Assembly: GCF_000143415.4 (NCBI RefSeq) | Contig: NW_003314638.1 | Span: forward strand, 1-8,574 | DNA length: 8,574 bases | Direction: 5' to 3' | From: Selaginella moellendorffii | Lineage: Eukaryota; Plantae; Lycopodiophyta | Shown here: in pieces, positions 303 to 8,574 of the stretch | Layout: each line of letters starts with the position of its first letter | Numbering within the stretch: the stretch's first letter is position 1 | Program-made: the position numbers and the translations under genes | Notes under the pieces: model-generated | The model's database searches: none | The model's input: only the letters and a program-made list of their open reading frames with translations | What the model was told of the DNA's origin: nothing

Positions 303-545
303 TAAGCACGTGAGGCCTCACGCGGTTTTTTCCTCCGTGTGTGGCTTCATGTGCGAAGGGTTTGGTGTGGTAAGGTATGTTGCGGAACAGCCAGAAGCCC
401 AGGGTGAATATAAGTACGTGAGGCCTTGTGAGGTTTTACCACCGCCCGAGGACTCCTGTGCATGGGCCCCAGGCGAGAGTCATTTGCGAAAGTGTTCTGC
501 ATGAAACTGGTGCCCTGAGGCTTCTGGCCGAAGAGCATTTTTTAT
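303..545. repeat. GC-rich island with an imperfect direct repeat (303-337 / 411-444), a 14-bp palindrome (309-322) and an inverted repeat (390-406 / 511-528)
   Basis: TAAGCACGTGAGGCCT versus TAAGTACGTGAGGCCT, 108 nt apart. CGTGAGGCCTCACG is a perfect palindrome. GCCAGAAGCCCAGGG pairs with CCCTGAGGCTTCTGGC with one bulged A. Confidence 0.7.
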
Positions 546-689
546 TTAATTTGTGTAGAGTGTGGTTTATTTTTGCATATTGAGTGTATCAATATCTTTT
601 AGTTAGCAGATTTTATTGAAGAACTGAAGACTACCTACAGTTAAGTGCATGCAGCAACAGATCATATAAAAAATGAATGCAGAGAATAA

Positions 690-990
690 CAAATCGGGAT
701 TTCTAGGAAGTTCGTGCGTTTTGTTAATAATAATCACAAAAACCTGATGTTCAGCCAGTTAGAAGATTGTCTGAAAATTATGCATGTACTGATTCTTCAG
801 CTCTTGAGCAACTGATTGCTGCTGGCTCACTTTCTATATATATCAAAGAGATTTTTTTTTAACAATAAACATCTAAGCTGCTGCAGTTAATTGTAAAGTT
901 TAAAAAGGAAAAGAATTAGAAAAAGAAAAAACAGAAAACACGAGCTTTTTACTACTAATAGCAAATCGGGATTTCTAGGGTATGCGTGCG
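690..990 (+). repeat. 29-bp imperfect direct repeat (690-718 / 962-990) overlapping the PPR ORF start
   Basis: CAAATCGGGATTTCTAGG is exact (18 bp) at 690 and 962. The match extends to 25/29 identity, ending in CGTGCG. Confidence 0.8.
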
Positions 991-3717
991 GCGCTAGGGT
1001 TTGTGTGGTGTCTGTCATTTCTCAACAATCTCATGGAGTGGAAAACGTTTTCCAGGGATCCCACTTTCTGGTGGGACAACAGGTTCAAGAAGAAAAACAA
1101 GTTCTTCTCAGAGTCCTACCCGGATTTCAAACATGTTTCTACCGGAGAGAGCCTGTGGATCGCCAACAGGAAAACACCAACCTGGGTCTCTGCAAAACTC
1201 GAGTCGCTCGCTGACCCAGCTGTAGGTAAGGCCACCACCGCCCGCTACAAATCTCCACATACACCGGTGAGTTTAGGGAGGCTGATACACCGGGTGAGAG
1301 ACTCAGCCAAGAGCAGATCCCTTTCTTTGGGAAAACAAGCCCATGAAGCTGTGCTCAAGAGTGATGAGCACAAAAGCAACATCTACTTGTTGACGGGATT
1401 GATCAATATGTACTGCAAGTGTGGCGAGCTTGAGGAGGCTCGCAAGATTTTCGACTCCATGGGAACCCGGAGTGTTGTGTCCTACAACGCGATCATCCAG
1501 GGCTGCGGCTCGAATGGGCAAGCTGAACTTGCTCTGGAGTACTACTCTGCCCTGAGAGCTTGTACCACCATTCAACCCAACGATCGGACACATGTCGCGG
1601 TGATCAGCGCCTGCTCCAGACTTGCTACCGAATCCAGTGAGAAGAGGGAGAGAGCTCTACGCATCGGGATGGAGATCCATTCAATGCTGAGCAAGGAGAA
1701 GAAACAGGTAGATCTGTTCGTGGCGACTTGCCTGGTAGACATGTACTGCAAGTGTGGCGAGCTTGAGGAGGCTCGCAAGATTTTCCACTCCATGGGAACC
1801 CGGAGTGTTGTGTCCTACAACGCGATCATCCAGGGCTGCGGCTCGAACGGGCAAGCTGAACTTGCTCTGGAGTACTACTCTACCCTGAGAGCTTGTACCT
1901 CCATTCAACCCAACGATCGGACTCATGTTGCGGTGATCAGCGCCTGCTCCACACTTGCTACCGAATCCAGCGAGAAGAGGGAGAGAGCTCTACGCATTGG
2001 GATGGAGATCCATTCAATGCTGAGCAAGGAGAAGAAACAGCTAGATCTGTTCGTGGCGACTTGCCTGGTAGACATGTGCTGCAAGTGTGGCGAGCTTGAG
2101 GAGGCTCGCAAGATTTTCGACTCCATGGGAACCCGGAGTGTTGTGTCCTACAACGCGATCATCCAGGGCTGCGGCTCGAACGGGCAAGCTGAACTTGCTC
2201 TGGAGTACTACTCTACCCTGAGAGCTTGTACCACCATTCAACCCAACGATCGGACTCATGTCGCGGTGATCAGCGCCTGCTCCACACTTGCTACCGAATC
2301 CAGCGAGAAGAGGGAGAGAGCTCTACGCATCGGGATGGAGATCCATTCAATGCTGAGCAAGGAGAAGAAACAGGTAGATCTGTTCGTGGCGAATTGCCTG
2401 GTAGACATGTACTGCAAGTGTGGCGAGCTTGAGGAGGCTCGCAAGATTTTCCACTCCATGGAAACTCGGAGTGTTGTGTCCTACACCGCGATCATCCAGG
2501 GGTGCAACACGAACGGGCGAGCTGAACTTGCTCTGGAGTACTACTCTGCCCTGAGAGCTGATAAAACCATTCAAGCTGATGCTTGCACCTACACCTGCGT
2601 CCTTGTTGCTTGCGGGAGTGTGATGGCGATCAAGCTCGGGAGGGAGATTCACCAGCTGGCGAAGCATAAAGGGCTGCTGAAAAACGATCCAGTTCTGGGC
2701 TCCAGCCTGGTGAGCTTCTACGGCAAATGCGGAGATGTTGATTCTGCTCAGGAAGCGTTTGACGAGTGCCGAGCTCGGGACAACACGGGTCTCTGGAACT
2801 CTCTCATACAGGCTTACACTCTCCAGGGCCGATCCATCGAGGCCTTGGAGCGTTTCTATTCCATGACTCAGGAGGAGGGCTGTAAAGCTGACGATGTGAG
2901 TTTTGTCTCGGTGTTGAACGCTTGCAGCCATGGTGGTCTGGTCGGGAAAGGAAGGCTGCTTCTGGATGAAATGCCCAAGCAGTATGGAGTCAAGCCACGT
3001 CTGGAGCATTATGTGTGCCTGATCGATATGCTCGGGCGAGCTAACCTCCTCGNNNNNNNNNNNNNNNNNNNNNNNNNNNNNNNNNNNNNNNNNNNNNNNN
3101 NNNNNNNNNNNNNNNNNNNNNNNNNNNNNNNNNNNNNNNNNNNNNNNNNNNNNNNNNNNNNNNNNNNNNNNNNNNNNNNNNNNNNNNNNNNNNNNNNNNN
3201 NNNNNNNNNNNNNNNNNNNNNNNNNNNNNNNNNNNNNNNNNNNNNNNNNNNNNNNNNNNNNNNNNNNNNNNNNNNNNNNNNNNNNNNNNNNNNNNNNNNN
3301 NNNNNNNNNNNNNNNNNNNNNNNNNNNNNNNNNNNNNNNNNNNNNNNNNNNNNNNNNNNNNNNNNNNNNNNNNNNNNNNNNNNNNNNNNNNNNNNNNNNN
3401 NNNNNNNNNNNNNNNNNTTGAGCTTGGCCGCAATCTCGTACGCGAGCGATGTGATCAACGTTCTAAAAGACATACCCGAGGAAGAGAAAGAGGATCACCT
3501 GTGCGGCCACAGTGAGAAGCTTGCGCTGGGGTGTGCTCTGGTGAACTCGCACCAGAAGGAGACCATCAGAATTGTGAAAAATCTCCGAGTTTGTGACGAT
3601 TGCCATGCGGCCACTGCTCTCATCTCTAAGCTGGAAAAAAGGCTAATCATCTGCAAAGATGCCAGTCGGGTTCATGTGTTCCAGGATGGCAGATGTTCCT
3701 GTGACAACTACTTTTGA
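982..3717 (+). CDS. PLS-class pentatricopeptide repeat protein with C-terminal DYW cytidine deaminase domain (organellar RNA-editing factor) and an N-terminal PDF motif
   Basis: The translation shows repeated S (LVDMYCKCGELEEARKIFDSM), P (VVSYNAIIQG) and L motifs, then P2-L2-S2 (TGLWNSLIQAY / VSFVSVLNACSHGGLV / LEHYVCLIDMLGRA). After the N gap comes a DYW domain with HSEKLA, KNLRVCDDCH and CSC. The true start codon is uncertain, and frame continuity across the gap is assumed. Confidence 0.93.
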   Translation: MRAALGFVWCLSFLNNLMEWKTFSRDPTFWWDNRFKKKNKFFSESYPDFKHVSTGESLWIANRKTPTWVSAKLESLADPAVGKATTARYKSPHTPVSLGRLIHRVRDSAKSRSLSLGKQAHEAVLKSDEHKSNIYLLTGLINMYCKCGELEEARKIFDSMGTRSVVSYNAIIQGCGSNGQAELALEYYSALRACTTIQPNDRTHVAVISACSRLATESSEKRERALRIGMEIHSMLSKEKKQVDLFVATCLVDMYCKCGELEEARKIFHSMGTRSVVSYNAIIQGCGSNGQAELALEYYSTLRACTSIQPNDRTHVAVISACSTLATESSEKRERALRIGMEIHSMLSKEKKQLDLFVATCLVDMCCKCGELEEARKIFDSMGTRSVVSYNAIIQGCGSNGQAELALEYYSTLRACTTIQPNDRTHVAVISACSTLATESSEKRERALRIGMEIHSMLSKEKKQVDLFVANCLVDMYCKCGELEEARKIFHSMETRSVVSYTAIIQGCNTNGRAELALEYYSALRADKTIQADACTYTCVLVACGSVMAIKLGREIHQLAKHKGLLKNDPVLGSSLVSFYGKCGDVDSAQEAFDECRARDNTGLWNSLIQAYTLQGRSIEALERFYSMTQEEGCKADDVSFVSVLNACSHGGLVGKGRLLLDEMPKQYGVKPRLEHYVCLIDMLGRANLLXXXXXXXXXXXXXXXXXXXXXXXXXXXXXXXXXXXXXXXXXXXXXXXXXXXXXXXXXXXXXXXXXXXXXXXXXXXXXXXXXXXXXXXXXXXXXXXXXXXXXXXXXXXXXXXXXXXXXXXXXXLSLAAISYASDVINVLKDIPEEEKEDHLCGHSEKLALGCALVNSHQKETIRIVKNLRVCDDCHAATALISKLEKRLIICKDASRVHVFQDGRCSCDNYF
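1039..1209 (+). other. PDF motif (OSB/pTAC9-type organellar ssDNA-binding motif) at the N-terminus of the PPR protein
   Basis: The peptide WKTFSRDPTFWWDNRFKKKNKFFSESYPDFKHVSTGESLWIANRKTPTWVSAKL matches the OSB PDF pattern W..F...P..WWDNR..K.N....PDFKH..TGE.LW.....P.WV...L. Recognised by eye. Confidence 0.88.
1408..2559 (+). repeat. Intragenic tandem array of 333-bp (111 aa) units: three full copies plus about 150 bp of a fourth
   Basis: Unit starts ATGT(A/G)CTGCAAGTGTGGCGAGCTTGAGG occur at 1408, 1741, 2074 and 2407, an exact 333-nt period. Adjacent full copies differ at about 5 of 111 residues. One period equals S(31)+P(36)+long L(44). Confidence 0.97.
3053..3417. other. Assembly gap (365 N) expected to hide the end of S2, E1, E2 and the start of the DYW domain
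   Basis: Run of N. Its size (about 122 codons) is close to what the missing S2-end/E1/E2/PG-box region would need. Confidence 0.95.
3418..3717 (+). other. Visible part of the DYW deaminase domain (DYW:WW-like, terminal NYF)
   Basis: HxE at 3508-3516 (HSE), CxxC at 3592-3603 (CDDC) and the terminal H...CSC second zinc site. The segments LCGHSEKLALGCALVN and IICKDASR resemble the WW clade rather than the PG-type LAIAFGL or the KP-type HAE. Confidence 0.85.
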
Positions 3718-4315
3718 AAACACGTCAGTGCTCTTTCTTGCAGTTATCCCTGGTTTTAAACCCTCCGTGAGTCAAGCAGAAACATGGGCCGCTGAGTGAG
3801 CATGCCTCGTCAAAGTACCGCCGTCAACCTGAACTTCACAGAGAAAAAATTAACATTTAAAAGTTAAAACTATGCAAAAGGAGGATGACACGTTGTCTTA
3901 AATTTAAATTTCTTTTTGGTAGCAGAATCGGGGAATGCTGACTAAACCTGCCAACAGGTGCCCCAAAACGGAGTGCCCAGATTCAGATAATAAGCTTTAG
4001 TATGAAGACTTGCTGGTACCCAAACTCTTTGCTAATAGCAAGTACCGCCTCATGTTCCGGGAGCAAGGTGATGGCGGCTTGCGGCATGACCAACTTTGGG
4101 TTTGTTCTCCTAGAGCACGTTGAAGACGTGTGGAAGATGGTGACGACAGCATTTGTTTCTTGCGACGTACTCACCAGTTCCTCGGCAACTTCTTCCTTCC
4201 AGATGTTTTGAGCTTGTCGTGAGTGGTGACCTGCTTGCTCTCTCCTGTGATGACTTCTTCCAGCCTCTGGTGCCCAACCTCAAGGTTCTCTTGTGGATGG
4301 AGCTAGCCCTACACA

Positions 4316-5075: not shown

Positions 5076-5578
5076 ATGGCAGCAGCCGCGGAGATTTATG
5101 AGGAGAGGCCTGAGGAGGTGGAGGAAGCAGGTAATCCGATTTTAGGGTTGGAAGAGGAAACAGAGCTCTGGGAAATGGGGCCGATCGAGCTGGATCTGGG
5201 CCTGCTCGTGCTCTATCTTCACCAACAGGAGGAGGAAGAGGTGCCCATGGAGGGAGAGGTGGCCATGGAGTGGGAGGAGGGCGCGGGGTGGCCGGGGTTG
5301 GCCGCGGATCTCTGAATCTGGCCCCGGGAGGATTAGGCCATGGTTCTGAGGCGGCTCGAGGAGGGGGTGCCCCGGGAGGAGGAGGCCATGAGGAGGAGGA
5401 CGCCGCGGTTCTTCTCCGGGAGGAGGAGGCCATGGATCATTGCCAGGAGGAGGCCAAGCCTCGGTGGGAGGAGCCGAAGCCACAGCGGGAGGAGTCCAAG
5501 CCGCGCCCGGAGGAGCCCAAGCCACGTCCGGAGGAGTTCCCCTGGAGCACAGCGTGCCGGGAGCTCCAACTGCTTTGA
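5076..5578 (+). pseudogene. Disrupted Glu-rich, low-complexity ORF inside the element (possibly the N-terminal part of the Myb protein)
   Basis: MAAAAEIYEERPEEVEE... continues through TGA 5313-5315 and TAG 5334-5336 into AMVLRRLEEGVPREEEAM. A frameshift at about 5390 then leads into EEEDAAVLLREEEAMDHCQEEAKP... The EEEAM motif recurs across all pieces. Confidence 0.55.
5447..5536 (+). repeat. Four 21-bp coding tandem repeats (EExKPxx)
   Basis: Units start at 5447, 5468, 5489 and 5510 and encode EEAKPRW, EEPKPQR, EESKPRP and EEPKPRP. Confidence 0.9.
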
Positions 5579-5629
5579 GAACCAGAGATGGCTTTGAGTT
5601 TACATTTCTTAGGTTGCATGCATGCATGA

Positions 5630-5958
5630 GTGATTGAGAGCTCCCGGCGGGGTCATGAAGAAGAGGGAGATGACAGCGTCCCCGATCTGGAACAAGACCC
5701 GGATGCTCACATGGAGGAGCTCGACGACGAGTCTGTCCAGTTTGTGGATACCTCGGGTTTTGCTGCACCTGCTGCTGCGAAGAGAACCCGGGGAAAGAAC
5801 TGGAACCATGCTGAGACCATGGTCCTGATTGATCTCGTTCGGGAAAAACATCTCGCGAAGATTGCGGGGGAGGGAGGAGCAGCCAGCATGTTCTCATAAC
5901 GAAGGCACAGCGCTGGAATCTCATCTTTCACCGTTTTGCTTTAGGGTTTAAATGTACA
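5630..5958 (+). pseudogene. Myb/SANT-like (trihelix-type) DNA-binding protein of the Harbinger element, frameshifted and truncated
   Basis: An acidic leader is followed by RGKNWNHAETMVLIDLVREKH (from 5789). After a frameshift near the G-rich run 5866-5877, the second helix ITKAQRWNLIFHRFALGF (W at 5914) appears in another frame. No third-helix C..KW motif follows. Confidence 0.75.
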
Positions 5959-6406
5959 TTGCGGATGACAAGAGCCCTGCTGCCTGAGGAAGAAGACCGT
6001 GAACTTGAGGTTCGTCGGGCCGTGATTGGGAGGAGGTTTTGCATCGGCCTGTGGTGGGTGAAGCCTCGAAATGTCACCACCTGGAGTAAGTTTTCTTTGG
6101 AGTATTACGATGTGGGGAGGAAACTTCAGATGGAGAAGAGGACGTTCTTCACCATTTGTGGCATGCTGGAGAGCGAGATCCGGAAGCAAGATACCGGTTG
6201 GAGGAGTGTGGTGCTGGTGGACAAGCTTTCCAAGAACACAGATTACTTGGATCTGGCGGACAAGTTCAGCATCGGGGAGTCCACAGCTCATGAGATTGTC
6301 ATGGACACTACTGCGGCGATTGTCAAGTGTCTCAGGTACAAGATTCATTTTCCTTCAACTGCCAAGGAGGTTCGAGCTGTTGCTGCTGGCTTTCGACAAG
6401 TGACAG

Positions 6407-6456
6407 GTACATTTTCTTATGTTTTTTGGATTGTTATAAGTTTTGATGCCCAATAG
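6407..6456 (+). other. Transposase intron 1 (50 nt)
   Basis: ACAG|GTACAT...CAATAG|GT, T-rich, interrupting homology just before PNVAGAID. This splice leaves a phase mismatch. An alternative GT at 6400 restores the frame. Confidence 0.75.
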
Positions 6457-6618
6457 GTGCCTAATGTTGCTGGAGCGATCGACTGTACTCCGAGATCATC
6501 CGACCTACTAGACTGGACGGCGAGAGCTACTACGATCGGAAGCAGCAGTACTCGGTCATCTTGCAAGGGGTTTGTGATGCCCAGAAGAGGTTCCTCAGTG
6601 TCTATGCTGGGTGGCCAG

Positions 6619-6671
6619 GTATGTTTCTTTGTGTGTTGTGGATGGTTCTAAAATGTTCTTTTTGCTTTCAG
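6619..6671 (+). other. Transposase intron 2 (53 nt)
   Basis: CCAG|GTATGT...TTTCAG|GA. Splicing gives the conserved WPGRVHD. Confidence 0.92.
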
Positions 6672-6842
6672 GACGCGTCCACGACATAAGGGTTTTTCGT
6701 AATTCAACCCTCAGGAACAAGATTGTAGCAAGGGAGCTGCTGACATCGCCCGCGGTGTTAGCATATGACGATAGGATCAAGCCATACCTAATGGGGGACA
6801 AAGGGTACCAACTCCAGCAGCATCTGATGATTCCACACACAA

Positions 6843-6896
6843 GTAAGTCTTCTTCATTCTACTTTCTTTTGTTCACTTGTTTTGGTTGTTGCTCAG
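6843..6896 (+). other. Transposase intron 3 (54 nt, in frame and stop-free)
   Basis: A|GTAAGT...GCTCAG|CT, pyrimidine-rich. Splicing gives LMIPHTTPNPTPSKAAFN. Confidence 0.88.
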
Positions 6897-7342
6897 CTCC
6901 AAACCCGACACCATCCAAGGCAGCTTTCAACCTTCATCACCACCTTGTTCGGATTGTTATTGAGCAAGCATTTGGACTTCTTAAAATGAAGTTCAGATGC
7001 TTGGATCAAAAACAAAGGATCCAGCCAAAGTACCTTCCCAACATCATCAAGAGTTGTTGCATTTTGCACAATTTCTTGATTGATGCTGGGGAGACTGATC
7101 TTCAGGCGGAGATCCAAGCTTGGAGGAAAGAGGTGAAAAGGCTCAAGGACCAGGACTTCTTTGTCGATTACGGTGATCCCGAGCAAGCGGAAGGGGAGCC
7201 TCGTGAGGAGTTGCACAGTCCAGAGGATGTGAAAGAGGTTAGAGAGAACCTCACGTTTTCCCTCTGTCTTTGCCAGTGGCGTTCGTGTTTGCTTTGAAAT
7301 TTGCCGGGAAACATTTGAATTTGAATTACGTGAATTTTAAGT

Positions 7343-7527: not shown

Positions 7528-7759
7528 TTGGTCCTTTCTCAACATAAAAGATAATGTTTTGCCAAGCTTACCACAGCCACTGGCAACCTTGATTGCCAAT
7601 GATGTTGTCCTTGGCTGTGGTATCTATAACCATACAGCTAGGGCCAAAGTTACACCACCAATGGCCCATAGCAAGCACAGCCATGGTGGCACAAGGTCTC
7701 GGCCATGGCTAGCACTACCTTGGCTGGCCTTAGCCGTGGCATACCCATCTACTAGAGGA

Positions 7760-8055
7760 GAGCTGTTGTAGGAGGAGTGTTAGAGGAGTTGGAGGAGAGC
7801 TGTTGCAGGAGAAATGCTGGAGGAGCTGAAGAGCTGTTATAGGAGGAGTGCTGGAGGAGCTGGAGGAGACTCAATGCACAAGGGGTTTTAGAGGAGCTAG
7901 AGGGTGAGAAAGAATGATTTGATGAAAATAAATAAAAAACTAAAAAATCCAAGAGTAGAATTGGCAAAAGTACAATGTGGAAGAGAGTTGTTGCAGGAGG
8001 AGCACTAGAGGACATGGAGGAGAGTTGCTACAGGAAGAGTGTTGGAGGGAGGAGA
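7760..8055 (+). repeat. Degenerate purine-rich minisatellite of about 37 bp in two clusters
   Basis: GAGYTGTTRYAGGAGGAGTGYTRGAGGAGYTGGAGGA-like units start at 7760, 7797 (34 nt) and 7831, then at 7985 and 8022, separated by an A-rich spacer. Confidence 0.8.
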
Positions 8056-8574
8056 TATGTTGCATTGGAGGAAAGTAAGAGCCACTAGAGGAGCCACTAG
8101 CCACTAAGGGCACTAGAGGAAAATAAGAGTTGCTAGGTGGAGAGTTGGGCATTATACACAATACCATCTACAATAACTAACCCTAACAGAACTCAAATGG
8201 ATATAATTTTCTGCATTGCACTATGCAACAACGTTTGGTTTGCTTTGATATTGTCAATTTTTTACATAAATAAAAAATTTATATGATGTACTCATTTTAA
8301 TACATTTTTTTATTCATATGTACTTCTTGTTTATCTCTCAAAGAGTTCAACTAATGTTTTTTTTTATCAATTTTATTCTTCCTATAGCAAGCTTAAAGCA
8401 AATAGTGAAGAATATAGGGAAGAAGTCCTACACTCTTGCAATACTAAAATCTTGCAAACTTTCCTTTAAGAACATTATTACTAGTCAAAAAGTTCACTTT
8501 TTTTGAGTAGTCTGATGTGTTTGTCTTTAAAGCATGTCCAATAACAGCAAACCAGGAACTTTTACTGCTCCTCA

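What the first reader, a model, noticed from the sequence alone, without database searches (positions are those of the whole stretch)
982..3717. OSB-type PDF ssDNA-binding motif fused to a PPR-DYW editing deaminase
Seen: residues about 20-76 (1039-1209) form a complete WWDNR...PDFKH..TGE.LW...P.WV motif in the same open frame as a PLS array and, past the gap, a DYW domain with intact HSE/CxxC. Established: PDF motifs are the ssDNA-binding C-terminal modules of plant organellar OSB/pTAC9 proteins, which act in nucleoids and recombination surveillance, whereas PPR-DYW proteins edit organellar RNA. Inference: the fusion could tether an editing enzyme to nucleoid ssDNA or R-loops for co-transcriptional editing, add general nucleic-acid affinity, or even direct deamination to ssDNA. 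I do not know of a functional characterisation of this architecture.
Basis: partly seen in the sequence, partly recalled or inferred. Interest (0 to 1): 0.9.

Follow-up and report, generated by a model that had tools for sequence, protein, structure and literature searches.

The report
PPR-DYW editing factor with OSB motif
This Selaginella gene encodes an organelle RNA-editing enzyme (PPR-DYW) that really does carry, at its very start, the small nucleic-acid-binding "PDF" motif otherwise known only from plant organellar ssDNA-binding OSB proteins. The same combination turns out to be an old, widespread family in liverworts, peat mosses, lycophytes and ferns, and I found no paper describing it.

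Summary
Window 1039-1209 encodes a complete PDF motif. All invariant residues are present, 409 library proteins match at E<=1e-3, and its AlphaFold model matches only the PDF regions of Arabidopsis OSB1-4. It lies in one frame with a PLS-type PPR array and, past the gap, a DYW deaminase with HSE and CDDCH.

The gap does not break the reading. Seven paralogous loci of Selaginella moellendorffii were fetched. Five hold uninterrupted ORFs of 800-1234 aa running PDF+PPR+E1/E2/E++DYW (in L003 the first half of the PDF is frameshifted); two (L003, L010) have a damaged PDF. The distance across the gap (410 nt) and the codon phase equal those of the paralogs. Contigs from RNA libraries tile 1008-1420 without joints.

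The fusion is not a Selaginella oddity. PDF+PPR proteins, 47 of 82 clusters with DYW, occur in Sphagnum, Calypogeia, Diphasiastrum, Adiantum and Ceratopteris. PPR-linked and OSB-type PDF motifs share a phase-0 intron right after the invariant Lys, which points to common descent. The window's family has lost that intron.

Most likely the PDF is a flexibly tethered single-strand nucleic-acid clamp at the 5' end of the PPR tract. This mechanism is inferred, not shown.

Two oddities remain. The real start is probably ATG 1033, so there is no presequence. Two paralogs have a broken PDF.

No paper describing this architecture was found.

The parts
982..1032 (+). Upstream in-frame ATG plus 17 codons (MRAALGFVWCLSFLNNL); doubtful as coding
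   Evidence: In frame in the window, L001 and L005. Out of frame in L004 and L006 because of indels in a (GT)n run, and shifted in L003. RNA-library contigs start at 1008, with zero depth at 500-995.
1033..1035 (+). Probable true start codon (MEWKTF...)
   Evidence: In frame with the main ORF in five of the six aligned copies (ATG also present in L003, where an 8-nt deletion shifts it out of frame; L010 lacks 1040-1124). The ORFs of L004 and L006 start here. Selaginella P0100 and Adiantum P0110 also begin within 5-9 residues of their PDF.
1039..1209 (+). PDF motif (OSB-type), one copy, no intron
   Evidence: phmmer gave 409 hits at E<=1e-3. All invariant columns are present. AlphaFold pLDDT 86. 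Foldseek hits only the PDF regions of OSB1-4 in Swiss-Prot and OSB-type proteins in AFDB clusters. No PDB relative was found.
1213..1260 (+). Predicted disordered linker between PDF and the PPR array
   Evidence: AlphaFold model of the first 300 residues: residues 61-76 have pLDDT below 50, PDF residues 1-59 about 80-88, PPR helices from residue 81 above 90. Four paralogs (L001, L003, L004, L006) have a 21-nt insertion here; L010 has an 18-nt one.
1273..3052 (+). PLS-class PPR array (up to the gap)
   Evidence: Pfam PPR_2 E 1.5e-62, PPR E 7.4e-60, PPR_1 E 2e-36.
1408..2574 (+). 333-bp tandem repeat, 3.5 copies at 96% identity: amplified PLS triplets inside the PPR array
   Evidence: Tandem Repeats Finder. 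Paralog ORFs of 800, 1009, 1027, 1029 and 1234 aa differ mainly in the number of these units.
3053..3417 (.). Assembly gap; by homology it holds the end of the PPR array, E1/E2/E+ and the first part of DYW (PG box)
   Evidence: Equivalent to L001 8426-8790, which is open and in frame. The anchor distance of 410 nt equals that in L004, L005 and L006.
3418..3439 (.). 22-nt inverted piece at the contig end (assembly artefact)
   Evidence: Reverse complement of L001 8759-8780, which lies about 31-52 nt upstream of the homologous place.
3440..3717 (+). C-terminal part of the DYW deaminase domain: HSE 3508-3516, CDDCH 3592-3606, CSC, end ...DNYF, stop 3715-3717
   Evidence: Pfam PF14432 E 3.5e-32. 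97-99.6% identical to the paralogs.

Best explanation
The window holds one copy of a young multi-copy nuclear gene family of Selaginella moellendorffii. The gene encodes an intronless PLS-class PPR protein with E1/E2/E+ motifs and a DYW cytidine deaminase, that is, a site-recognition factor plus enzyme for organellar C-to-U RNA editing. Its first ~57 residues are a genuine PDF motif homologous to those of OSB ssDNA-binding proteins.

It belongs to an old family with the layout [presequence]-PDF-PPR-(E or E+DYW), present in liverworts, Sphagnum, lycophytes and ferns. That family arose by exon-level fusion with an OSB-type PDF unit.

Inferred mechanism: the PPR tract reads the RNA upstream of the target C in parallel orientation, N-terminus at the 5' side, and DYW deaminates the C. 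The PDF is a small autonomous aromatic and basic domain on a short or flexible linker at the 5' end of the tract. It adds sequence-independent grip on single-stranded nucleic acid next to the PPR footprint, most simply the RNA just upstream, raising affinity or keeping the site unfolded.

Shown here: architecture, homology, family distribution, shared intron, presence in RNA libraries. Inferred: ligand, effect on editing, and localisation.
For: Architecture and homology.

One uninterrupted ORF from PDF to DYW in five paralogous loci, though in L003 the first half of the PDF is frameshifted. The gap keeps length and phase.

RNA-library contigs tile 1008-1420 with no joints while 500-995 is silent. 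Contigs over 1209-1287 and 1251-1323 match the window's own variants.

Family: 82 clusters with PDF+PPR, 47 of them also with DYW, in Sphagnum, Calypogeia, Diphasiastrum, Adiantum and Ceratopteris.

PPR-linked PDFs cluster on the motif tree (5 label changes against 31.9 in shuffles). A single clade is not rejected (p-AU 0.88).

The same phase-0 intron after invariant K20 occurs in Selaginella P0100, Diphasiastrum P0176 and in most PDF units (at least 9 of 13, read by exact-match mapping) of a Kingdonia OSB-like gene.

All aromatic and basic invariant residues are kept in PPR-linked PDFs across bryophytes to ferns, which implies that the ancestral binding surface is under constraint.

The PDF is always N-terminal and, in the family consensus, only about 15 residues from the first PPR motif. 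In the window the linker is predicted disordered.

The PDF is necessary and sufficient for OSB1 binding to ssDNA; OSB1 and OSB2 prefer ssDNA over dsDNA or RNA (reviews).
Against: No binding, editing or localisation data exist for any PDF-PPR protein.

OSB proteins prefer ssDNA to RNA, so RNA as ligand is an assumption.

Two of the eight Selaginella copies examined (L003 frameshifted, L010 with about 85 nt deleted) have lost an intact PDF yet keep the PPR-DYW ORF. The motif may therefore be dispensable in this young family.

dN/dS among the paralogs has no power: 0-1 synonymous and 1-4 non-synonymous changes in the PDF.

The Selaginella proteins start at the PDF with no presequence-like extension, unlike 60 of 80 relatives, so organellar import is not assured.

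The DYW domain ends in NYF, not DYW.

At position 1052 all RNA contigs carry the paralogs' T, so full-length expression of this exact copy is not shown.
Confidence: 0.55

Rival explanations
1. Nucleoid tether. The PDF binds ssDNA exposed in transcription bubbles, R-loops or replication forks of organellar nucleoids. This concentrates the editing factor on nascent transcripts, so editing is co-transcriptional.
For: The PDF is the ssDNA-binding module of OSB proteins, which prefer ssDNA to RNA. All binding-surface residues are conserved. In the window's protein the linker is long and predicted flexible, as a tether would be. Selaginella organelles have thousands of editing sites (titles and abstracts seen).
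Against: In most family members the PDF sits only about 15 residues from the first PPR motif. That looks more like an extension of the RNA-binding surface than a loose tether. There are no localisation data. The Selaginella copies lack a recognisable presequence.
Confidence: 0.2
2. The PDF acts here as a protein-protein or sorting module, for example contact with OSB or other nucleoid proteins, self-association, or a non-canonical import signal, and not as a nucleic-acid binder.
For: AtOSB2 is tetrameric. In Selaginella the PDF is the extreme N-terminus, where a targeting signal would be expected. PDF motifs also occur fused to a kinesin motor (P0028), so the motif is used in varied contexts.
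Against: The conserved residues are those typical of a single-strand-binding surface (Trp, Phe, Arg, Lys). Most relatives have a separate presequence-like extension before the PDF, in Diphasiastrum on its own exon. The first 20 residues hold three acidic residues, unlike presequences.
Confidence: 0.1
3. In this particular Selaginella family the PDF is a decaying leftover. The copies are very recent segmental duplicates in transposon-rich DNA, with runaway amplification of PLS triplets, and several or all may be on the way to pseudogenes.
For: Copies are 93-99% identical and their flanks are rearranged, with a Harbinger element alongside. The PDF is broken in L003 and L010. The repeat number varies, giving ORFs of 800 to 1234 aa. 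The C-terminus reads NYF or NCF instead of DYW. dN/dS is uninformative.
Against: Coding parts, PDF included, are 98-99% identical while the adjoining flanks are 86-92% identical. Five of seven fetched loci keep an intact PDF in a long open ORF. The family is present in RNA-library contigs. The older paralog P0100 and distant relatives keep the motif intact.
Confidence: 0.1
4. The PDF directs the DYW deaminase to single-stranded DNA, so that the protein deaminates organellar or nuclear DNA rather than RNA.
For: Only the ssDNA preference of OSB PDF motifs and the lack of a presequence in the Selaginella copies.
Against: The long PLS PPR array with E1/E2/E+ is the standard RNA-reading apparatus of editing factors. 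The DYW signature is the ordinary C-to-U RNA-editing type. No precedent was found in the literature searched.
Confidence: 0.02
5. Artefact: the PDF-PPR junction or the reading across the gap results from misassembly or wrong gene calling.
For: The window has a gap and a 22-nt inverted piece at its edge. RefSeq models of the family (471-617 aa) are inconsistent with the ORFs.
Against: The same junction is found in six further Selaginella loci. Gap-free ORFs exist, RNA contigs cross the junction, and the same architecture occurs in many other genera.
Confidence: 0.01

Closest known systems
OSB proteins (Arabidopsis OSB1-4, OSB2 = pTAC9): organellar ssDNA-binding proteins with an OB-fold-like domain and 1-5 C-terminal PDF motifs
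   Same: The ~55-residue PDF motif is the same: all invariant residues, the same predicted fold (OSB1 rmsd 1.6 A, 41% identity). In intron-bearing relatives of the window's gene the phase-0 intron after K20 is also the same.
   Different: There is no OB-fold or SSB-like domain. The PDF is N-terminal rather than C-terminal and is followed by a PPR-E-DYW editing module. There is a single copy. The window's copy has lost the intron.
PLS-class PPR-E-DYW RNA editing factors (e.g. Physcomitrium PPR56 and PPR65, Arabidopsis DYW-type factors)
   Same: PLS PPR array, E1/E2/E+ (seen in paralog L001), a DYW domain with HxE and CxxCH, and an intronless gene.
   Different: It has an extra N-terminal PDF domain. 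No presequence is recognisable. The C-terminal tripeptide is NYF. PLS triplets were recently amplified in tandem.
PPR proteins with accessory nucleic-acid domains (PPR-SMR, RRM-PPR such as PPR4, PRORP, ORRM and MORF fusions listed in PMC13386178)
   Same: A PPR tract combined in cis with a second nucleic-acid-related module.
   Different: The accessory module here is the PDF motif. It is not among the fusions listed in that kingdom-wide survey, nor among the DYW-associated domains in PMC3239186.

Membership tests
PDF motif (as defined for OSB proteins) | About 50-residue motif with the conserved pattern W..(F/L)...P..WWDNR..K...PDFKHK....LW....P.WV | tested here: met
   All 13 invariant or nearly invariant columns are present. 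409 phmmer hits. HMM built from A1.
PDF motif (as defined for OSB proteins) | Same fold as the PDF regions of reviewed OSB proteins | tested here: met
   Foldseek against Swiss-Prot models gives OSB2, OSB1, OSB3 and OSB4 as the only significant hits, aligned on their PDF regions. Both sides are predictions.
PDF motif (as defined for OSB proteins) | Binds single-stranded DNA | not testable with these tools
   Known for OSB1 and OSB2 from the literature only.
OSB protein family | Central OB-fold / SSB-like domain preceding the PDF motifs | tested here: not met
   No SSB Pfam match in the window's ORF. The PDF is followed by PPR repeats. It is therefore not an OSB protein, only a carrier of its motif.
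PLS-class PPR-DYW editing factor | Tandem PPR motifs of the PLS type | tested here: met
   Pfam PPR, PPR_1, PPR_2, PPR_3 at E 1e-22 to 1e-62.
PLS-class PPR-DYW editing factor | E1/E2 (and E+) motifs between PPR array and DYW | tested here: inconclusive
   These lie in the window's gap. They are present in paralog L001 (E_motif E 5.7e-9, Eplus E 2.9e-4), and the gap has the matching length and phase.
PLS-class PPR-DYW editing factor | DYW deaminase domain with HxE and CxxCH zinc and catalytic signature | tested here: met
   PF14432 E 3.5e-32. HSE at 3508-3516, CDDCH at 3592-3606, and CSC is present. The last three residues read NYF instead of DYW, a variation outside the catalytic signature.
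PLS-class PPR-DYW editing factor | N-terminal organellar targeting presequence | tested here: inconclusive
   Only 2-19 residues precede the PDF in the Selaginella copies, and the 17-codon leader is out of frame in two paralogs. No targeting predictor was available. 60 of 80 relatives have an S/T-rich, acid-poor extension of at least 40 residues.
PLS-class PPR-DYW editing factor | C-to-U editing of a defined organellar site | not testable with these tools
   No assay was possible, and no target prediction was attempted.

The most novel reading that the evidence does not exclude
PDF-PPR-DYW proteins are editing factors physically coupled to single-stranded DNA of organellar nucleoids (transcription bubbles, R-loops), so that editing in bryophytes, lycophytes and ferns is co-transcriptional. 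In the extreme form, the DYW domain is brought to act on ssDNA itself. A related untested idea is that the in-cis PDF does in these lineages what the trans-acting MORF proteins do in seed plants. No PDF-PPR turned up from seed plants in my limited searches.
Probability: 0.12. Interest if true: 0.85.

Novelty: new variant of a known kind. Interest (0 to 1): 0.6.

Why it matters
PPR-DYW proteins are the enzymes of plant organellar RNA editing and the basis of programmable RNA base editors. How they reach and hold their targets without helper proteins in early land plants is an open point.

Dozens of PPR-DYW and PPR-E proteins from liverworts to ferns carry a conserved ssDNA-binding motif from the organellar recombination-surveillance protein OSB. 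This has four consequences:
- It widens the known use of the PDF motif beyond OSB.
- It gives a testable built-in accessory domain for editing factors: delete or transplant it in E. coli or moss assays.
- It offers a possible physical link between nucleoid DNA and RNA editing.
- It shows by a shared intron that the fusion arose by exon shuffling early in land-plant history.

It also flags that the RefSeq models of this Selaginella family are probably mis-spliced.

Tried and rejected
- Pfam has no PDF model, so hmmscan of the N-terminus gave nothing.
- A sequence search of the PDB with the PDF profile found nothing below E 0.6.
- Foldseek against the PDB and VIA-align wide found no structural relative (best Z 2.7), so the fold gives no mechanistic lead.
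- AFDB clusters gave only OSB-type proteins and no PPR fusions.
- dN/dS among the Selaginella paralogs lacked power because there are too few substitutions.
- The homology search with the L001 N-terminus found only two more Selaginella paralogs, because the search relies on exact words.
- The Zaegel 2006 paper could not be read.
- The 30-nt loose end that RNA contigs carry before position 1008 was looked for in the window and in seven paralog loci and not found. Its origin (another copy or a distant 5' exon) stays open. It holds an in-frame TAG (my own reading of the 30 letters, not a tool result), so it would not add a presequence.
- Misassembly of the junction was considered and rejected.
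- Membership in the OSB family was rejected because there is no OB-fold.
- I did not predict the RNA target from the PPR code and had no targeting predictor.
- Absence of PDF-PPR from seed plants, hornworts and other mosses is not established. The searches were word-limited or capped at 150 rows.
Full report
**What is in the window**

The + strand ORF 982..3717 begins with a short leader. It then runs through a PDF motif (nt 1039-1209), a linker, a long PLS-type PPR array (Pfam PPR_2 E 1.5e-62, PPR E 7.4e-60) and an assembly gap (3053-3417). After the gap comes the C-terminal two thirds of a DYW deaminase domain (PF14432, E 3.5e-32), with HSE at 3508-3516, CDDCH at 3592-3606, CSC, and the end ...DNYF. 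Inside the PPR array a 333-bp unit is repeated 3.5 times at 96% identity (1408-2574).

**The gap, tested first**

The closest database protein (P0006, 97% identical over the N-terminus) is XP_024536012 of Selaginella moellendorffii. Its locus L001 (GL377592.1) is 93-95% identical to the window over more than 5 kb and has no gap in the gene.

L001 holds one uninterrupted ORF of 1029 aa: PDF, PPR, E motif, E+ motif, DYW. Window 3053-3437 (385 nt) corresponds to L001 8426-8810 (385 nt). The distance between anchors on either side of the gap is 410 nt in the window and in L004, L005 and L006. The codon phases agree. So the estimated gap length keeps the frame, and the missing part encodes the last PPR-like motif, E1/E2/E+ and the PG-box part of DYW.

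The 22 nt at the right edge (3418-3439) are the reverse complement of the stretch matching L001 8759-8780. This is a fold-back typical of a contig end, so the residues translated there are not real.

**Is the PDF motif real?**

phmmer with window:1033-1239 against 1.84 billion representative proteins gave 409 hits at E<=1e-3, 114 at E<=1e-10 and 10 at E<=1e-30. Most have 2-13 repeated matches, and some carry a weak SSB Pfam domain, i.e. they are OSB-type proteins.

In an alignment of 75 motifs the window has every invariant column (W3, R17, K20, P30, F32) and every nearly invariant column (P10, W13, D15, D31, L41, W42, P49, W51).

An AlphaFold model built on that alignment has pLDDT 86: helix, short strand, helix, two short strands, C-terminal helix. 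Foldseek against Swiss-Prot models returns only A. thaliana OSB2, OSB1, OSB3 and OSB4, aligned on their PDF regions (OSB1 188-241, rmsd 1.6 A, 41% identity). AFDB clusters return OSB-type proteins.

Pfam has no model for the motif. No solved structure resembles it by sequence or fold.

The literature held here describes PDF as a 50-residue motif that is sufficient for OSB1 binding to ssDNA, and says OSB1 and OSB2 prefer ssDNA to dsDNA or RNA.

**Is the junction real?**

Six further Selaginella loci of the same family were fetched (L001, L003, L004, L005, L006, L010). Five have uninterrupted ORFs of 800-1234 aa from PDF to DYW, though in L003 the first half of the PDF is frameshifted.

Contigs from four RNA-labelled public runs were laid on window 500-1420. 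Three runs cover 1008-1420 in overlapping pieces with no joints, while 500-995 has zero depth. This argues for RNA rather than contaminating DNA. Pieces over 1209-1287 and 1251-1323 match the window at positions where every fetched paralog differs or has an insertion, so this copy or an identical allele is represented.

At position 1052 all contigs carry the paralogs' T. No single contig spans PDF to PPR for this copy, and the runs are only presumed to be RNA. Full-length expression of this exact copy is therefore not shown.

**Start codon and targeting**

The ATG at 982 is out of frame with the main ORF in L004 and L006, because of indels in a (GT)n run, and is shifted in L003. The RNA contigs begin at 1008. 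The ATG at 1033 (MEWKTF...) is therefore the likelier start, and the PDF begins at residue 3.

The older Selaginella paralog P0100 and the fern protein P0110 also begin within 5-9 residues of their PDF.

By contrast, 60 of 80 PDF-PPR proteins from other genera have at least 40 residues before the PDF. These extensions are poor in acidic residues (6.7%) and rich in Ser/Thr (17.7%), like organellar presequences. In Diphasiastrum P0176 this extension is a separate exon.

Whether the Selaginella proteins reach organelles cannot be decided here.

**The wider family**

Searches seeded with other PDF-PPR proteins found the same layout in:
- ferns: Adiantum capillus-veneris, A. nelumboides, Ceratopteris richardii
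- a lycopod: Diphasiastrum complanatum
- many Sphagnum species
- the liverwort Calypogeia fissa

All 82 clusters retrieved have a PDF N-terminal to PPR repeats, and 47 also have a DYW domain, mostly ending in ...CSCxDYW. Some members have two or three PDFs (P0110, P0166, P0167, P0019, P0158).

In the family consensus the PDF is followed after about 15 residues by the first PPR motif. In the window the linker is longer and predicted disordered: pLDDT below 50 for residues 61-76, against 80-88 for the PDF and above 90 for the PPR helices.

On a tree of 117 PDF motifs the PPR-linked ones cluster (5 label changes against 31.9 in shuffles, 0 of 500 as low). The window pairs with P0100 (SH-aLRT 97). 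A tree holding all PPR-linked motifs as one clade is not rejected (p-AU 0.88). The motif is short and many forks are unresolved, so this is compatible with a single origin but does not prove it.

**Shared intron**

In the P0100 gene the PDF is split by a phase-0 intron directly after the invariant Lys (K20)...WWDNRRNK | RSPSYPDFKH. Diphasiastrum P0176 has an intron at exactly the same place...HRSEK | VNAKYPDFKH. In an OSB-like gene of the angiosperm Kingdonia most PDF units (at least 9 of 13 by exact-match mapping) are split there too, e.g. ...WWDNRFNK | RNPKSPDFKH.

This is independent evidence that the PPR-linked and OSB PDFs are the same genetic unit moved by exon shuffling, not a convergent motif. 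The window's family has no intron there and has four extra residues in that loop. This fits a later intron loss, for instance retroposition, which is commonly invoked for PPR expansions.

**How it most likely works**

Shown: the protein has all the parts of a C-to-U editing factor, plus a conserved single-strand-binding motif at the end of the PPR tract that faces the 5' side of the bound RNA.

Inferred from established knowledge of PPR-RNA polarity and of OSB biochemistry: the PDF gives extra sequence-independent contact with single-stranded nucleic acid beside the PPR footprint.

I rate the RNA-clamp reading at about 0.55 and the nucleoid ssDNA tether at about 0.2. A protein-contact or sorting role gets about 0.1, a decaying appendage in this young family about 0.1, and DNA deamination about 0.02. 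The close spacing of PDF and first PPR motif in most members favours the clamp. The ssDNA preference of OSBs favours the tether. Nothing here decides between them.

**Cautions about this particular family**

- The copies are very similar: coding parts 98-99%, flanks 86-92%.
- They lie in rearranged, transposon-bearing DNA.
- They differ in the number of 333-bp PLS units.
- They end in NYF or NCF.
- Two copies have lost an intact PDF while keeping the rest of the ORF. L003 has +2 and -8 nt indels. L010 has about 85 nt of the motif deleted.

The motif may therefore not be essential in these copies, or some copies are decaying.

**Novelty**

Seven full-text searches gave no paper that links the PDF motif with PPR or DYW proteins. 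These included the strings WWDNR and PDFKH and combinations of PDF motif or domain, OSB, DYW, RNA editing, Selaginella and Sphagnum.

Three relevant papers were also read:
- A 2026 kingdom-wide survey of editing-factor domain fusions lists RRM, MORF and RanBP2-Znf fusions but not PDF.
- A 2026 OSB family study required the OB-fold and so would not have seen these proteins.
- The deaminase survey PMC3239186 lists PPR, TPR and ankyrin as DYW partners.

The library lacks most subscription journals and the original OSB paper could not be read, so prior mention cannot be excluded. The proteins themselves are in public databases, annotated only as PPR proteins.

I class this as a new variant of a known kind, with moderate to high interest (0.6). 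It is well above ordinary, because it defines a large, old subfamily with no description in the papers searched and gives direct experiments.

Noticed in passing
window 1408-2574; L001 6445-7947; L005; L006: The 333-bp (111-aa) PLS-triplet unit is amplified in tandem. The copy number differs between paralogs, whose ORFs are 800, 1009, 1027, 1029 and 1234 aa (window 3.5 units, L001 about 4.5).
   Followed up: partly
L001 6001-9090, L003, L004, L005, L006 against RefSeq XP_024536012, XP_024536032, XP_024522904, XP_024521142, XP_024522898: RefSeq models of this family (471-617 aa) remove in-frame parts of the repeat array as 'introns', while the genomic ORFs are uninterrupted (800-1234 aa). The models are probably mis-spliced.
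   Followed up: partly
window 3418-3439: A 22-nt reverse-complement fold-back sits at the right edge of the assembly gap. It is a contig-end artefact that adds seven false residues to the ORF.
   Followed up: yes
L003 about 4000-4140; L010 1995: Two paralogs have a damaged PDF but an otherwise open PPR-E-DYW ORF. L003 has a +2 nt and a -8 nt indel that frameshift the first half. L010 lacks about 85 nt (window 1040-1124) plus 5 nt.
   Followed up: partly
window before 1008 (RNA contigs of runs X1 and X4): RNA-library contigs carry 30+ letters (GTCGAAGGCCAAGTAGCCAATTATATATAT) in front of position 1008 that are absent from the window and from seven paralog loci. They come either from another copy or from a distant 5' exon. 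They include an in-frame TAG (read by eye from the 30 letters, not by a tool).
   Followed up: partly
window 691-708 and 962-979: The stretch just before ATG 982 (aaatcgggatttctagg, followed by ..cgtgcg) occurs twice, 270 bp apart, as if the 5' edge of the gene had been duplicated or an element inserted.
   Followed up: no
window about 5630-7300 (+): An intron-containing PIF/Harbinger-type transposase gene lies here (DDE_Tnp_4 E 1.7e-20, Plant_tran E 1.1e-6 in ORF 6611-7294). In L003 the same element lies inverted upstream of the PPR gene.
   Followed up: partly
window 5076-5600 and 7755-8100: There is a Glu/Gly/Pro-rich ORF region with 18-42-nt tandem repeats (5231-5537), and 23-37-nt GGAGGAGCTG-type repeats (7755-7869, with similar text up to about 8100). 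Neither has a family match.
   Followed up: no
P0007 (Cladocopium sp. Y103, EukProt), P0028 (Coptis chinensis): PDF motifs are not confined to green-plant OSB proteins. A dinoflagellate protein has seven PDFs, and an angiosperm protein combines three PDFs with a kinesin motor domain (this could be a merged gene model).
   Followed up: no
L008 1501-4314 (Diphasiastrum complanatum P0176): The gene has a clean three-exon layout. Exon 1 is the presequence-like 104 aa, exon 2 is the first half of the PDF, and exon 3 is the second half of the PDF plus the whole PPR-E-DYW part. This illustrates modular assembly.
   Followed up: yes
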